NCBI GenBank assembly: GCA_904063045.1 | Contig: CAJFCJ010000009.1 | Location: 1,240,968 to 1,304,967 of the forward strand | Direction: 5' to 3' | Length of the DNA stretch: 64,000 nucleotides | Origin: Dimorphilus gyrociliatus | Lineage: Eukaryota; Animalia; Annelida | In this document: positions 38,851-49,603 of the stretch, in pieces | Layout: the number at the start of each line of letters is the position of its first letter | Numbering within the stretch: position 1 is the first letter of the stretch | Position numbers and translations under genes: made by a program | Notes under the pieces: generated by a model | Told to the model about the DNA's origin: nothing | Databases searched by the model: none | Seen by the model: only the letters and a program-made list of their open reading frames with translations

Positions 38851-43001
<4,151 letters not shown>

Positions 43002-43401: not shown

Positions 43402-44651
<1,250 letters not shown>

Positions 44652-45269
44652 AAATAAGAGCCACTCTAGGTTCTCCGAACATCAAATTCTAAATGTTGTT
44701 CTACTTTTGGATATAAAGATCAAACGTGTTCGGTCAACTCTGTTACTCAAATCCATGTACGTGAAAAAGAAATATTTTTTCAGCAATGTGTATGTAATAC
44801 AGTGAAAGTTGCGCTTCGATAACAGCTGCTTCATTTAGCTAGACAACAGCATTTATGATATTTTATTTATTCTTAAACCATTCTCTCTTAAACATCTTTT
44901 ATAAAGCATTAAAATTATGAAATTCCTTTTTTTATATATGTTTATCTATATATTTAAAAAGTTTACTCTAATCTGCAAACAAAACTTTCTTATCTCGCTA
45001 TCCCGCTTCGTTATTTAAAAACAGCATTTTCATTCAGATCAGGATTGCAGAGATAGATTTCGATATTTACTAATTTTGTTCTTTTGAATAAAAGAGATAA
45101 GAAAAATTATTAAAAAAAGAAAGAAATTAACAGATAAGAGAAATTGATTTCGGTATAATATAAAAAAAAACAAATTATATCATCATTATTTCGATTGATT
45201 TCTTGTATTTTCATCGTAATTTTAATCCAATTGTTATAACAAAACATAGAATTTTTCGTAAATAGTTTC

Positions 45270-48200
45270 TCAGGATTGAGGATAGCGTTGATGCTGCCTG
45301 TACATTCCATGTCCTGCATCAGAAAAAGTGCTGTAGCTATCATTCTGCCCCGTATTACTTAAATGTGATGTGTAGGGCGAGTAGTTAAATGTACCCGTAG
45401 ACGGATACATATGTGAATACTGCGTGGTGTAGGACATTGACTGAGCTCTGTATGCATTCGCATTCGGGTCGTACGTTGATTGCTGATGCTCAATATAAGA
45501 TTGCTGAGGTATTGCTGCGTAGGAAGAATAATAGCGTTGCTGTTGTTGAGGAATTTGATGATGTGATTGATGCTGATATTGTTGAAAATGTTTCTCTCTT
45601 TCGTATTGTTGCATTCGGTACTGTTCTTGTTGTCTTTGATGAACTGCTAATTGCTGTTGCTGCCGTCTCTTTGCCTGTTGAGCAGCCTGCTGGTTTTGAA
45701 TTTCAATCATTTTTGCCATGTTGCAACTTCCCTGAATCATATTTTGCTGCATAATTGGTGCGGGCCTGTAATGATTTTCCGTTATGATGCAGTCTTCTTC
45801 ATCTGCATTATTATTGATATTGGCTGCTTCGACAGCCATTTTAAGAAGATCAATGGGGGGAGCCTGAATCGAGCTAGTAACACTTAGATCGCACGATGAT
45901 TGTTTGTTCATATTATCGTTATGGCAAAAGTTAAACTCTGGAATTAAAAATGTATTGTTTATGGCTTGATCTTGCCTTTCTTCTTCCTCCTTTTTATCGT
46001 GAATACTTAGATTTAAAACCTCAGCCTTTTCCTCGTTACAATCAACGGTCATTAAGTTATTCTCCATCATATGATCATTCGGAGGAGTAGCCGATTGCAC
46101 ATTTTGAGGTGGATTAGGTGAACTGTACGTGTTGTCCTTTTGTCCACCTCCATTCACCATATTCGGTGATGCTGGCGAGAGAGCCCAAATTCCCTGTCTT
46201 TCCTCCTTAGCAGGTGATAATAATGCCAATTTCATTCCAACGTCTGCATAATCGGTTGCATGATCATTTCCAACCTTATCTCCGTATCTTTCTCCCTGAC
46301 TTTCTTTGGTGTTCTCTGTTGAGTCTGCTTCAGCTAGTATTTCTCGGATTTCTGGAATATTAAGTTTTTCTGATGCTTGACTAGAATTCAATAAATTTTC
46401 ATCAATCTTGTCTGCAGGCACCAAAGGTGGAATTTCCTCTGTATGACTAGACTCTGTTGTTGCTTCTTGGTCTCGTGTATTGTTTGGACTCTTCTCAAGC
46501 TGATTATACTCATCCCAATCGACTTTTTCACTATCGATCTTGTCGTTTTCCTCTTCGATATCATTTTTTTGTCCATCTTTGATTGATTCTGGTTCTGGTT
46601 CCAGTTCCGGTTCTGGTAATTCTTTAGCAGTTTGTACTTTTCGAGTTTTCTTTCTTTTAAGTAGTTTGAGCTTTCTCAATTTGTGTTCCTGGAGCCTTCT
46701 TCGTAGGAGGGTTTTTTTCGGCATAAAACGAGAATGCCTCATTCGATTAAAAGATTTACATCTTTTAGTTGATATATTCGCGAATACCACTTGTGTTTTA
46801 AGAGTGTCTTTTAAGTTTCTCTTTTCCTGAGCAGTTGATTTGGAGCAAAAATAATCGGCCTCGCCATCTGACATGCAGACGGTCGGTGTAATTTGATTAT
46901 CATCAATGTTTGCATCAATTTCGTTTCTGTCGTTAGCTGTCAACCTTATATTCTTATTTCGACCATATTGAATTCTAAAGCGATTTTTCCTTTTAAGCGA
47001 TTCCAAAATCGGTGAAGATTCTTTGATTTTCTTATTTTTTTTTCGAAGTTTTTCAGCTGTAAGAGCAGTCATCAAAGGTGATAATCTACACAAATTTCTC
47101 AAGTCAACCCGTGTACCTGTACTTGCGATAGTTTGTGGTACACGCAAATCTACCATTAACGGTTTTGGTCCCAATTCAATTTTTTCGTCATCGTCACTCT
47201 CCTCCAATAGTTCAACATGCTCACAAATAGCACCGTCATCCCGTTTACTTCCGGAACGTTTAGCTAAGGCAAGTTGTGATTTGTTCGGTCTTAAATCAAG
47301 AAAGACATGCGAATTTGATGAAGTTTTCAATTTTAACGAAGCTAAATTAGATGAAAATTTTTCGATATTATTTTCTGATTTTTCATCCATGTCGGAGACG
47401 CCGTCGAGTTGCGGAATAGTAGTATTTGAAATGTCTTTCTCTACCTCATCATTTTCTTCATCTTCTTCATCCTCCTCCCTCTCATCTTCTCTTTTTACGT
47501 GAGTTTTTTCATCGATGCTTTCGTCTTCTTCTTCGTCTTCATTGTGAGCTAATAATATACTGTCGCCTTCTTCCAATTGAAACATATCCTGGGCGTCAAG
47601 TTGCTTAAATGCTTCAGCATCACCGCTCTTCGCTTTACGTAACAAAATTTCTTTGCCTTCTTTGGCTTTCTGTAATTGTGTGGAGGAAAGGCGTTCAATA
47701 GTTTCCCTACTCACGACAGGCTCGTCACCGACTTCTAGCGCCGTGGCGTCAGGCGTCGACTGAATCGATGCGTCGCCACGGAAACGTTCAACTACTTCGT
47801 TCAAACGTTGTAAACCATCGGTATCATATTCATACTTTGATTGAATAGATGGTGTTCTACTCAAGGACGGTTTCGTCTTACCTTCTTCCTTCCAAATGTA
47901 TTCTAAAGCTGGATTTCTACCATTTAAACTAGATTCGTCAGCATTTGTAATATCTGTTGCAATAATATCAACTTCAAGTTGACAATACGATTGTCGATTT
48001 GCATCTTCTCTTTTCTTTGCTCGTTTTGCTTTTAGATAATCCATTCCGCGTAAATTGTAATCAATAAGAAATTGCAAATTATATGGTACATGCACTTGGT
48101 GAGGTTGAAAAACCGTGTTGAGAATGGCGCCCTCCAGTAATAATGTTGAGACACGTTTCAAATCAGCCGGATCGTATAAAAAAAGTTTAAAAAACACATT

Positions 48201-48563
48201 TTCCTCCCCGCTGTAGCCATACATACGGAATGCCCGAACAGTTTGCACACTATGAACTTTTTCCGAATTCTCCTGTTTAGAAGCGGACGATAAATTTAGA
48301 GCTTTTTCAACGCTATAAGCCAATAATCGGCCGTATTTTATAAGCTCTTCATCATCTTCCATATTTGGTGCAATTACGAATAAATAAGGCAGCACACCAT
48401 GAATATGAGCGCATACTTTTTCACCAGTTGCCGTTGAGCCAAAAATTCTTAGAACTGGAATGTTATGAACGATGCAATCATCCAATTCCCTTACAATAGG
48501 ATCATAATCAGGAATAGGAGAGGTTAGGTAATAGTCCATATAAACTATGCGTACATCGAACAT
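45270..48563 (-). CDS. REV3 (DNA polymerase zeta) N-terminal-domain protein lacking the exonuclease-like, polymerase and C-terminal Cys domains; intronless, about 1097 aa from MFDVRIV
   Basis: MFDVRIVYMDYYLTSP, PVLRIFGSTATGEKVCAHIHGVLPYLFV, FQPHQVHVPYNLQFLIDYNLRGMD, RQSYCQLEVD and NPALEYIW match the REV3 N-terminal domain. The rest is low-complexity and ends in TGA at 45270. Confidence 0.8.
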   Translation of the reverse strand: MFDVRIVYMDYYLTSPIPDYDPIVRELDDCIVHNIPVLRIFGSTATGEKVCAHIHGVLPYLFVIAPNMEDDEELIKYGRLLAYSVEKALNLSSASKQENSEKVHSVQTVRAFRMYGYSGEENVFFKLFLYDPADLKRVSTLLLEGAILNTVFQPHQVHVPYNLQFLIDYNLRGMDYLKAKRAKKREDANRQSYCQLEVDIIATDITNADESSLNGRNPALEYIWKEEGKTKPSLSRTPSIQSKYEYDTDGLQRLNEVVERFRGDASIQSTPDATALEVGDEPVVSRETIERLSSTQLQKAKEGKEILLRKAKSGDAEAFKQLDAQDMFQLEEGDSILLAHNEDEEEDESIDEKTHVKREDEREEDEEDEENDEVEKDISNTTIPQLDGVSDMDEKSENNIEKFSSNLASLKLKTSSNSHVFLDLRPNKSQLALAKRSGSKRDDGAICEHVELLEESDDDEKIELGPKPLMVDLRVPQTIASTGTRVDLRNLCRLSPLMTALTAEKLRKKNKKIKESSPILESLKRKNRFRIQYGRNKNIRLTANDRNEIDANIDDNQITPTVCMSDGEADYFCSKSTAQEKRNLKDTLKTQVVFANISTKRCKSFNRMRHSRFMPKKTLLRRRLQEHKLRKLKLLKRKKTRKVQTAKELPEPELEPEPESIKDGQKNDIEEENDKIDSEKVDWDEYNQLEKSPNNTRDQEATTESSHTEEIPPLVPADKIDENLLNSSQASEKLNIPEIREILAEADSTENTKESQGERYGDKVGNDHATDYADVGMKLALLSPAKEERQGIWALSPASPNMVNGGGQKDNTYSSPNPPQNVQSATPPNDHMMENNLMTVDCNEEKAEVLNLSIHDKKEEEERQDQAINNTFLIPEFNFCHNDNMNKQSSCDLSVTSSIQAPPIDLLKMAVEAANINNNADEEDCIITENHYRPAPIMQQNMIQGSCNMAKMIEIQNQQAAQQAKRRQQQQLAVHQRQQEQYRMQQYEREKHFQQYQHQSHHQIPQQQQRYYSSYAAIPQQSYIEHQQSTYDPNANAYRAQSMSYTTQYSHMYPSTGTFNYSPYTSHLSNTGQNDSYSTFSDAGHGMYRQHQRYPQS

Positions 48564-49603
48564 GTTGCGTTTTCTAGCTGTTGAATACAAATATGAGTAA
48601 TTAATCGAAGAATTTAACATACTACTTACCAAAGTTGGATCACTTTCAAACAGATAGCAAATTGTATAAATAAGATAAATTTTGTAAATTGACTCAACGC
48701 TACCAATCTGATTATGAGCATTCTTCGAAAAAAAACGTAATAATCGATTCTGTAGCAATATGTATACAAAACATGGCTGACAATGTTGATTTTTGCTACC
48801 GCCATCTGTAGTATTACTAAAAACTTTATCTAAATAATATTCTAATTTAGAAACAAGCTCTTAAAAAGTTATGCAAAGTTCCTAACAGAATTCTGATAAA
48901 ATACATCAAGTTCAGGTAAAGAAAATAAGACATAACGCTATTGTATATTTGTTTTATCTATATTTTCTGAGAATAAATTGTTTCTTAATAAAAGGATAAA
49001 TAAAATATGAATAATATCCTTTCACTTATATTATATTAATACTTATTGAGTACCATACATCAATAGGAAAAGAAGGAACGCCATTAACCTAAAATAGATA
49101 TGAGACAATATATATATATACAGATATACATAATATTTAAATGGCTTTATTATTACTAATATTATAAAAATATCAATGTTTTTAAATGAATAATTATACA
49201 TAATGAATAGAACTAATCCAGTATCTAATAATATTTTTTAAAACATCAGATTTTATTGATATTCTACTTTATGATGAATTACGTTATTTCAATTTATTAT
49301 TTCTTCCCCCTTCCAATAAAGTTATCTATCATTTAAGTACCTCTTTATTTATCTTCACTAATTTTAATGAGATTTTTATCTTCGTTTTATTCTTTTTCCC
49401 ATTACATGAACCGTTTTGAACCGAAATGCGAACAAATCTGTTGTTCTATATAAAAGAATCGTTGATTCTTAAATAATTTGAAAAGAGATTTAATAGATAA
49501 AAATTGATTAAAGTATTTTGTTAATCGACACTTAATAAAAGGTAACTCTTTCGTTTTGGAATATTTTTCAATTTCCAAGTAAAATTTGGACATTACGCGG
49601 TAT

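What the first reader, a model, noticed from the sequence alone, without database searches (positions are those of the whole stretch)
45270..48563. Polymerase-less REV3: the Pol zeta N-terminal domain as a stand-alone gene (possible split Pol zeta)
Seen: the first ~255 aa carry the ordered REV3 N-terminal motifs. Acidic, basic (KKKNKKIK, RRRLQEHKLRKLKLLKRKK) and Q-rich tracts follow, then a stop at 45270. No B-family motifs (SLYPS, YGDTDS) or C-terminal Cys clusters occur in this ORF or anywhere I could read on the minus strand. Only about 620 bp of AT-rich DNA separates the stop from the convergent SURF4 stop. Established: animal REV3 is NTD, long insert, inactive exonuclease, polymerase, CTD in one chain, and the NTD packs against the catalytic core. 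Inference: either gene fission giving a two-chain (or trans-spliced) Pol zeta, or a duplicated NTD repurposed as a regulator or decoy. I know of no description of either in animals.
Basis: partly seen in the sequence, partly recalled or inferred. Interest (0 to 1): 0.8.

Follow-up and report, generated by a model that had tools for sequence, protein, structure and literature searches.

The report
Pol zeta catalytic gene split in two
In this miniature annelid the gene for the catalytic subunit of the DNA-damage-bypass polymerase zeta is split into two separate genes on different contigs: one encodes the N-terminal domain plus a long spacer, the other the polymerase core. This is a genome-level version of the protease cut that splits the same protein in mammals.

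Summary
Window 45270-48563 (-) is an intact, expressed 1097-aa ORF with REV3_N and POL3_N domains, a long disordered spacer and a real stop, and no polymerase domain.

The missing half exists once, on another contig (G000:C11:400034-403303). It has its own conserved ATG mini-exon, a Rev7-binding motif, the inactive-exonuclease domain, the SLYPS and YGDTDS motifs and the C-terminal Cys clusters. The N-terminal domain is single-copy, so this is a gene fission and not a duplicated decoy.

A relative with saturated synonymous divergence (dS about 1.6), assembled independently, has both halves in the same two gene neighbourhoods. It has the same stop position, and both halves are under strong purifying selection (dN/dS about 0.1). 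A spliced RNA contig runs without a break through the ORF, its stop and the 3'UTR. This argues against misassembly and against splicing or trans-splicing out of the ORF.

Mammalian REV3L is already known to work as two chains after Taspase1 cleavage. The worm keeps that cleavage motif (QLDG), the residues of the interface between the N-terminal domain (NTD) and the exonuclease-like domain (EXO), and a Taspase1 gene.

The most likely reading is a two-chain, possibly three-piece, Pol zeta. I found no earlier description of a split REV3 gene. Physical association of the two products is inferred, not shown.

The parts
45270..48563 (-). REV3N coding sequence: 1097 codons plus TGA stop at 45270-45272, in a single coding exon
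   Evidence: ORF list. Pfam REV3_N and POL3_N. RNA contig colinear over 44616-48577. dN/dS 0.13 against the relative's orthologue, with the same C-terminus.
47529..48563 (-). Residues 1-345: REV3 N-terminal domain and the conserved stretch after it, including K49 of the NTD-EXO interface
   Evidence: PDB match to yeast Rev3 23-218. Single copy in the genome. K49 lies in the G-x-K/R-x-C-x-H-x-H-G block shared with Xenopus and Physella REV3. dN/dS 0.08-0.10.
47391..47411 (-). Residues 385-391, QLDGVSD: Taspase1-type cleavage motif. Predicted cut after D387.
   Evidence: The motif and its context TIPQLDGVSDM are invariant in both dinophilid species. The human site is QLD/GTAD (PMC7144948). The same motif occurs in 50 of 79 long REV3 representatives against 1.4 expected by shuffling.
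45273..47402 (-). Residues 388-1097: spacer with acidic, basic and Q/Y-rich tracts and conserved islands, ending in the conserved C-terminus ...RYPQS
   Evidence: dN/dS by region is 0.08-0.19, and 0.085 in the tail 941-1097. No BLAST similarity to the spacers of other REV3 proteins. No Pfam family.
45753..45803 (-). Residues 921-937, DEEDCIITENHYRPAPI: conserved island that resembles the start of the Rev7-binding motif of the catalytic half. It does not meet the Pxxx(A/P)P consensus. Function is speculative.
   Evidence: Nearly invariant between the two species. The motif scan is negative for the strict consensus.
48578..48629 (-). 5'UTR intron 2, 52 nt, GT..AG on the minus strand
   Evidence: Joint 48577^48630 in the RNA-derived contig of run X7. 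Ends read GTAAGT...AACAG. Donor and acceptor are conserved in the relative.
48750..49340 (-). 5'UTR intron 1, 591 nt, GT..AG on the minus strand
   Evidence: Joint 48749^49341 in the same contig, with only 30 nt on the far side.
48564..48749 (-). 5'UTR exons: 48630-48749 and the first 14 nt of the main exon, 48564-48577. A further 5'UTR exon starts at 49341. They hold a 31-codon uORF and an in-frame stop before the main ATG.
   Evidence: Spliced mRNA model built from the joints.
44616..45269 (-). 3'UTR, at least as far as the RNA contig reaches. AATAAA lies 398 nt after the stop. The last 36 nt overlap the end of the SURF4 coding exon on the other strand.
   Evidence: The RNA contig is colinear from 48577 to 44616 with no mismatches. 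A contig cannot define the true poly(A) site.
44163..44651 (+). Last coding exon of the convergent SURF4 gene. It is the downstream neighbour and occupies the place where polymerase exons would otherwise lie.
   Evidence: Pfam SURF4, E 1.5e-65. The same convergent arrangement is seen in the relative.

Best explanation
The ancestral single REV3 gene of this annelid lineage was broken inside the region coding for the long spacer, immediately upstream of the Rev7-binding motif. An earlier scan note names the species as Dimorphilus gyrociliatus. Two independent genes now exist.

REV3N is the gene in this window. It encodes the N-terminal domain, a Taspase1-type cleavage motif and a 710-residue spacer, and ends at a fixed stop.

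REV3C lies at G000:C11:400034-403303. It has its own promoter region, shared head-to-head with an MFS transporter gene, and an 11-codon first exon that supplies the ATG. It encodes the Rev7-binding motif, the inactive exonuclease domain, the polymerase domain and the Cys-rich C-terminal domain.

The gene split, its conservation, the expression of REV3N and the selection on both halves are shown. What follows is inferred. The two products reassemble without a covalent link: the N-terminal domain docks on the exonuclease-like domain, as the Taspase1-generated p70 and p300 fragments of mammalian REV3L do. Because mature REV3L is already a two-chain enzyme, the covalent link was dispensable, and the fission could be tolerated.
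For: One NTD and one NTD-less catalytic half:
- The Pfam DNA_pol_B scan of the genome finds four loci. I read C7, C5 and C10 as the Pol alpha, delta and epsilon genes from visible motifs only. C11 is confirmed as Pol zeta: its last exon best matches yeast Rev3 1159-1497, E 9e-57, against 8e-34 for Pol delta.
- Full-length REV3 queries map residues 1-260/400 to the window and about 683 to the end to C11.
- The NTD is single-copy.

REV3C looks functional:
- DFQSLYPS, YGDTDS and both Cys clusters are present.
- Purifying selection: exon 2 dN/dS 0.09, last exon 86% identical to the relative.
- FIITPQTSPP fits the Pxxx(A/P)P Rev7-binding consensus (PMC9926120) and aligns with the same block in other REV3 proteins.

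REV3C is an independent gene: the ATG, the 33-nt length of the mini-exon and its GTAAGT donor are conserved in the relative, which has no alternative internal ATG.

Not an assembly artefact: the relative's Logan contigs show HECT/WW - REV3N - SURF4 - orphan ORF - AAA and STT3 - MFS - REV3C on a 103-kb contig.

The REV3N stop is real:
- The C-terminus is identical in both species.
- dN/dS in the tail is 0.085.
- A 4112-nt spliced RNA contig runs colinear through the ORF, the stop and 654 nt of 3'UTR, with no internal joints.

Control: in two other eukaryotes the NTD ORF is followed on the same strand by exonuclease and polymerase ORFs.

Precedent for function in trans: human N70 and the C-terminal fragment stay associated, and separately expressed halves work together (PMC7144948). 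The p70/p300 heterodimer is the more active form and depends on K49, D2397, D2399 and R2431 (PMC13408197). The equivalents are kept here: K49 in REV3N, and DPD plus R at +32 in LSRVP in REV3C.
Against: - No direct evidence that the two proteins bind. The one complex prediction gave no answer (score 0.01).
- No RNA data were laid on REV3C, so its transcript structure rests on comparative evidence only.
- RNA support for REV3N comes from assembled contigs of a single run. Contigs drop rare isoforms and cannot show the true 3' end.
- REV7 was not located in the genome. The exon-wise HORMA scan found only MAD2.
- The relative's species is unknown, and the age and spread of the fission among annelids were not determined.
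Confidence: 0.8

Rival explanations
1. One protein after all: the REV3N pre-mRNA is trans-spliced between genes to the acceptor of REV3C exon 2. The genomic split would then be repaired at the RNA level, giving a canonical full-length REV3.
For: REV3C exon 2 begins at a good acceptor (TATTATAG|G), and the break lies exactly at that exon boundary. Contig-level RNA data cannot exclude rare chimeric transcripts.
Against: The RNA contig runs colinear through the whole ORF, its stop and the 3'UTR, with no joint or matching loose end inside the ORF. The last 157 residues and the stop position are conserved under purifying selection, which would be pointless if they were spliced away. REV3C has a conserved ATG mini-exon and donor that use this acceptor in cis. 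The genome paper found no spliced leaders in this species (PMC7854359).
Confidence: 0.04
2. Functional divorce: REV3C works as a Pol zeta without an N-terminal domain. REV3N has been kept for another job, such as a regulator, a scaffold or a condensate-forming Q/Y-rich protein, and is no longer part of the polymerase.
For: The spacer and the Q/Y-rich tail are conserved (dN/dS 0.08-0.19), although they resemble no other REV3 spacer. This suggests a function of their own. Binding of the halves was not demonstrated.
Against: The NTD itself is the best-conserved part (dN/dS about 0.1). It keeps K49, and REV3C keeps the matching DPD and R residues shown to be required for NTD-EXO binding in human REV3L. 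In B-family polymerases the NTD is an integral part of the fold (yeast Rev3 structure matches).
Confidence: 0.12
3. Artefact: a misassembly or a chimeric contig placed the two halves of one ordinary gene on different contigs.
For: Only the general fact that large genes rich in low-complexity sequence are prone to assembly breaks.
Against: Both halves lie deep inside megabase contigs and are flanked by other genes on both sides. A different species, assembled independently from three runs, shows the same two neighbourhoods. An RNA contig matches the window across the stop and the intergenic stretch with no mismatches.
Confidence: 0.02

Closest known systems
Mammalian REV3L p70/p300 heterodimer made by Taspase1 cleavage (PMC7144948; PMC13408197)
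   Same: [quoted passage not shown] The QLDG motif, K49 and the DPD and R interface residues are all present here. The Rev7-binding motif sits on the catalytic chain.
   Different: Here the separation is written into the genome: two genes, two promoters, two contigs. The break lies about 710 residues further downstream, just before the Rev7-binding motif. The spacer is therefore encoded with the NTD rather than with the polymerase. If Taspase1 also cuts, there would be three pieces.
Canonical single-gene REV3/REV3L (yeast Rev3, 6V8P/7LXD; mollusc, arthropod, vertebrate and plant REV3 of 1600-4600 aa)
   Same: The same domains in the same order: NTD, spacer with Taspase1-type motif, Rev7-binding motif, inactive exonuclease, polymerase, Cys-rich C-terminal domain.
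   Different: In all of those the domains lie in one polypeptide encoded by one gene. Searches show the usual colinear exon arrangement. Here no single gene encodes them all.
Split family-B DNA polymerases of archaea (Methanothermobacter PolB1/PolB2; the Nanoarchaeum split-intein PolB). From my own knowledge, not checked here.
   Same: A B-family polymerase encoded by two separate genes whose products must combine.
   Different: Those are archaeal replicative-type enzymes split elsewhere in the fold, between the exonuclease and polymerase parts, and one of them is rejoined by intein trans-splicing. Here the enzyme is a eukaryotic translesion polymerase split in a disordered spacer, and no intein is seen (Pfam).

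Membership tests
REV3 / DNA polymerase zeta catalytic subunit | REV3-type N-terminal domain (Pfam REV3_N plus POL3_N) | tested here: met
   PF24065 E 9e-16 and PF24055 E 6e-16 in the window ORF. Yeast Rev3 23-218, E 3e-19.
REV3 / DNA polymerase zeta catalytic subunit | B-family exonuclease-like and polymerase domains (DxxSLYPS, YGDTDS) in the same polypeptide as the NTD | tested here: not met
   No polymerase domain in the ORF or anywhere in the window. The domains are present in the separate gene on C11. The window gene alone is therefore only half of a REV3; the pair of genes together meets the definition.
REV3 / DNA polymerase zeta catalytic subunit | C-terminal CysA/CysB metal-binding domain (zf-C4pol) for binding POLD2/POLD3 | tested here: met
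   It lies in REV3C, not in the window gene. The Cys clusters are visible in the last exon. PF14260 is recorded on the relative's orthologous ORF.
REV3 / DNA polymerase zeta catalytic subunit | Rev7-binding motif Pxxx(A/P)P preceded by a hydrophobic strand | tested here: met
   REV3C has FIITPQTSPP and the relative has YVITPKLPPP. Consensus from PMC9926120. The motif aligns with the equivalent block of insect, mollusc and other long REV3 representatives. No strict motif in REV3N. Binding itself was not tested, and REV7 was not located.
Taspase1-processed two-chain REV3L | Q-[LVIF]-D/G cleavage motif downstream of the NTD | tested here: met
   QLDGVSD at residues 385-391, invariant in both species. 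Human site QLD/GTAD, where D and G are essential.
Taspase1-processed two-chain REV3L | A Taspase1 enzyme encoded in the genome | tested here: met
   Two exons at G000:C6:3661738-3662699 best match human Taspase1. One covers residues 232-265, including the D/T autoproteolysis site (E 5e-9). The other matches with E 1.5e-4.
Taspase1-processed two-chain REV3L | NTD-EXO interface residues (human K49; D2397, D2399, R2431) | tested here: met
   K49 in REV3N. DPD, and R 32 residues later in LSRVP, in REV3C exon 2, mapped through Xenopus REV3L and the human residue spacing.
Taspase1-processed two-chain REV3L | Actual proteolysis, and stable association of the fragments | not testable with these tools
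   Needs biochemistry. The complex prediction of NTD against the exonuclease exon gave no answer.

The most novel reading that the evidence does not exclude
Pol zeta's catalytic subunit in this lineage is a three-piece protein. Taspase1 cuts REV3N after D387. This frees the NTD (1-387), which joins REV3C, and releases the 710-residue spacer (388-1097) as a free polypeptide that is covalently attached to neither half. The strong conservation of this free spacer would mean that the REV3 spacer, regarded as largely of undefined function in mammals, has an autonomous function that acts in trans and could be studied here in isolation. A corollary follows: the Taspase1 site of REV3 is ancient, shared by animals and plants, and is not a vertebrate innovation as recently proposed.
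Probability: 0.35. Interest if true: 0.75.

Novelty: new variant of a known kind. Interest (0 to 1): 0.62.

Why it matters
Pol zeta is the main extender polymerase of translesion synthesis and a major source of damage-induced mutations. Two recent papers showed that mammalian REV3L is cut by Taspase1 and works best as a two-chain enzyme. One of them argued that this cleavage arose in vertebrates because of the large vertebrate insert.

A natural gene fission that has persisted between two species whose synonymous sites are saturated is independent evolutionary evidence on two points. First, covalent continuity between the N-terminal domain and the catalytic core is dispensable. Second, the spacer need not be attached to the polymerase.

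The fission offers a compact natural system of about 1100 and 1000 residues, against 3130 in humans. It could be used to study assembly of the halves and the role of the spacer. The same QxDG motif occurs in REV3 of molluscs, arthropods, echinoderms, cnidarians, flatworms and plants. This suggests that two-chain Pol zeta may be the ancestral state, which would explain why the fission was tolerated.

Tried and rejected
- **Complex prediction**, REV3N 1-345 against REV3C exon-2 product 80-267: no answer (ipSAE 0.01). This is not evidence either way. Only a fragment of the exonuclease domain could be supplied, because multi-exon proteins cannot be given by reference.
- **Search for REV7**: the Pfam HORMA six-frame scan found one locus, even at E up to 10 (C12:1894286-1894759). 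Its exons read as MAD2 throughout. REV7 stays unlocated, and I had no tool-derived REV7 sequence to search with.
- **PDB search with the first 100 residues of REV3C**, meant to hit the REV7-REV3 peptide structures: no hits, even at E up to 10.
- **BLAST of the spacer** (residues 261-1097) against 80 or more long REV3 proteins: nothing at E up to 0.01.
- **Metatranscriptome runs X1, X3 and X6**: only short patches or low-complexity acidic-tract matches. They are not informative.
- **NTD-only proteins P0011 and P0013** as possible further fissions: rejected. Their contigs carry the exonuclease and polymerase ORFs directly downstream.
- **Literature**: no paper holds REV3 together with 'gene fission' or 'split gene', and the one paper returned for 'polymerase zeta' + 'encoded by two' + REV3 is an unrelated Pol gamma study. 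The run accessions of the relative appear in no paper, so its species is unknown.
- **Duplicated NTD or decoy**: rejected, because the NTD is single-copy.
- **Misassembly**: rejected.
Full report
**Observation**

Window 45270-48563 on the minus strand encodes 1097 residues from an ATG to a TGA stop. Pfam recognises REV3_N (residues 1-55) and POL3_N (56-135) and nothing else. The best solved-structure match is the N-terminal domain of yeast Rev3, residues 23-218, E 3e-19. The acidic, basic and Q-rich tracts are as described, with one small misreading (RKKNKKIK, not KKKNKKIK). The convergent SURF4 exon ends 618 bp from the stop. Full-length REV3 proteins from other organisms match the window only with their first 260-400 residues, so no polymerase part is hidden in the 64 kb.

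**Where the other half is**

An earlier scan note names the genome as Dimorphilus gyrociliatus. I did not verify the name independently. The assembly size of 78 Mb is close to the published 73.8 Mb.

A six-frame scan of the whole assembly with Pfam DNA_pol_B finds four loci. From the motifs visible in their reading frames, three look like the Pol alpha (C7), Pol delta (C5) and Pol epsilon (C10) genes. I did not test those three assignments further.

The fourth locus, C11:400160-403300, is Pol zeta. Its last exon matches yeast Rev3 1159-1497 with E 9e-57, against 8e-34 for Pol delta. Full-length REV3 queries map their residues from about 683 to the end onto it, and nothing of their N-termini. 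It carries DFQSLYPS, YGDTDS and both C-terminal Cys clusters. The N-terminal domain occurs only once in the genome, in the window. The genome therefore has exactly one NTD and one catalytic half without an NTD. That is a fission, not a duplicated NTD.

**Is the split real?**

Three lines of evidence say yes.

1. *An independent assembly of a relative.* Logan contigs from three runs of an unidentified relative carry both halves in the same neighbourhoods. REV3N is 69% identical overall, and synonymous sites are saturated (dS about 1.6). The first neighbourhood is HECT/WW ligase - REV3N - convergent SURF4 - orphan ORF - AAA ATPase. The second is STT3 - MFS transporter (minus strand) - REV3C, on a 103-kb contig.
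2. *The end of REV3N is a conserved protein end.* Both species finish with the same residues before the stop. dN/dS is 0.13 overall and 0.085 in the last 157 residues.
3. *RNA.* Run X7 contains a 4112-nt contig that matches the window without mismatch from 44616 to 48577. It then skips two GT..AG introns on the minus strand (48578-48629 and 48750-49340). It is therefore derived from spliced RNA, and it shows one uninterrupted exon through the ORF, the stop and 654 nt of 3'UTR. In the spliced model the main ATG is preceded by an in-frame stop.

As a control, two NTD-only ORFs from other eukaryotes are followed on the same strand by exonuclease and polymerase ORFs. That is what an ordinary REV3 gene looks like in these data.

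**REV3C is a gene of its own**

Upstream of exon 2 lies an 11-codon exon beginning with ATG (C11:400034-400066) and ending at an AAA|GTAAGT donor. The ATG, the 33-nt length and the donor are conserved in the relative, while the intron has diverged. The relative also lacks the internal ATG that D. gyrociliatus has in exon 2, so this mini-exon must supply the start codon.

The gene sits head-to-head with an MFS transporter gene about 400 bp away, with conserved CACGTG/CACATG elements between them. The genome paper reports no spliced leaders or operons in this species (PMC7854359). REV3C is under purifying selection: exon 2 has dN/dS 0.09, and the last exon is 86% identical to the relative's.

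**Where the break lies**

REV3C starts a few residues before FIITPQTSPP (YVITPKLPPP in the relative). This fits the Rev7-binding consensus Pxxx(A/P)P preceded by a hydrophobic strand (PMC9926120). It also aligns with the equivalent block that lies 100-180 residues before the exonuclease domain in insect, mollusc and other long REV3 representatives.

The ancestral gene was therefore broken at the very end of the spacer. NTD plus spacer went one way. The Rev7-binding motif plus the catalytic core went the other.

**How it most likely works**

Human REV3L is cleaved by Taspase1 at QLD/GTAD (residues 523-529). The N-terminal p70 and the catalytic fragment stay together in an active Pol zeta complex, and the two parts function when expressed separately (PMC7144948). 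A 2026 study shows that the cleaved heterodimer is the more active form. It also shows that binding needs K49 in the NTD and D2397, D2399 and R2431 in the inactive exonuclease domain (PMC13408197).

In the worm these features are kept:
- REV3N has K49 in the same conserved block.
- REV3C keeps DPD, and the arginine 32 residues later in LSRVP.
- REV3N has the cleavage motif itself, QLDGVSD at 385-391, invariant in both species.
- The genome encodes a Taspase1 orthologue with the D/T autoproteolysis site.

I therefore infer a two-chain Pol zeta in which the NTD of REV3N docks on the exonuclease-like domain of REV3C. The fission was tolerable because the mature enzyme was already held together without a covalent link. 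The association itself is inferred. The only complex prediction I could run gave no answer.

**A further consequence**

If Taspase1 cuts REV3N, the spacer (388-1097) becomes a free polypeptide, unlike in mammals, where it stays on the catalytic fragment. It is nevertheless well conserved, with dN/dS of 0.08-0.19 and several nearly invariant islands. It resembles no other REV3 spacer. This is the basis of the three-piece reading in the novel case.

**By-product**

The motif is not confined to vertebrates. Fifty of 79 long REV3 representatives carry Q[LVIFM]DG within residues 301-800, usually as IPQxDGxxD, against 1.4 expected from shuffled sequences. Named examples include molluscs, insects, ticks, a sea spider, a spider, a crinoid, a jellyfish, Xenopus, fish and the plants Aquilegia and Amborella, and the flatworm Echinococcus. 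This contrasts with the statement that the site was acquired in vertebrate evolution. All of these species have a single-gene REV3, so the fission is derived.

**Novelty**

Full-text searches found no paper on a split REV3 gene, and the genome paper does not mention REV3. A two-chain Pol zeta is known at the protein level. A heritable two-gene Pol zeta, with the spacer assigned to the NTD gene, appears to be new. I rate it a new variant of a known kind.

**Limits**
- No reads were laid on REV3C.
- The RNA evidence comes from contigs of one run.
- REV7 was not found.
- The relative is unnamed.
- Binding and cleavage are untested.

Noticed in passing
P0017-P0165 (REV3 representatives); window 47391-47411: The Taspase1-type motif IPQ[LVIF]DG..D, 100-250 residues after the NTD, is widespread in REV3 of animals and plants. 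It occurs in 50 of 79 long representatives against 1.4 expected. This is at odds with the recent statement that the site is a vertebrate acquisition (PMC13408197).
   Followed up: partly
window 41647-42882 (-), and 38991-39515 (-): A 411-aa ORF with no Pfam family is 68% identical over 365 residues to a syntenic ORF in the relative. It lies upstream, on the same strand, of an AAA plus AAA_lid exon, so it may be the unrecognised N-terminal domain of an AAA ATPase.
   Followed up: partly
G000:C12:1894286-1894759 (L024): The only HORMA locus found by the Pfam scan reads as MAD2 over its whole length. A REV7 gene remains unlocated.
   Followed up: partly
window 44616-44651: The REV3N transcript contig reaches 36 nt into the SURF4 coding exon on the opposite strand. 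The two convergent genes therefore probably have overlapping 3' ends, unless the assembler merged them.
   Followed up: no
window 48630-48749 (-): The spliced 5'UTR of REV3N holds a 31-codon upstream ORF that ends before the main ATG.
   Followed up: no
L012:7790-7830 (G000:C11, about 399790-399830): Conserved CACATG and CACGTG (E-box-like) elements lie in the short divergent promoter region between the MFS transporter gene and REV3C. They are shared with the relative.
   Followed up: no
G000:C6:3661738-3662699 (L028-L030): A multi-exon Taspase1 orthologue with the conserved D/T autoproteolysis site (HD|TVGAV).
   Followed up: partly
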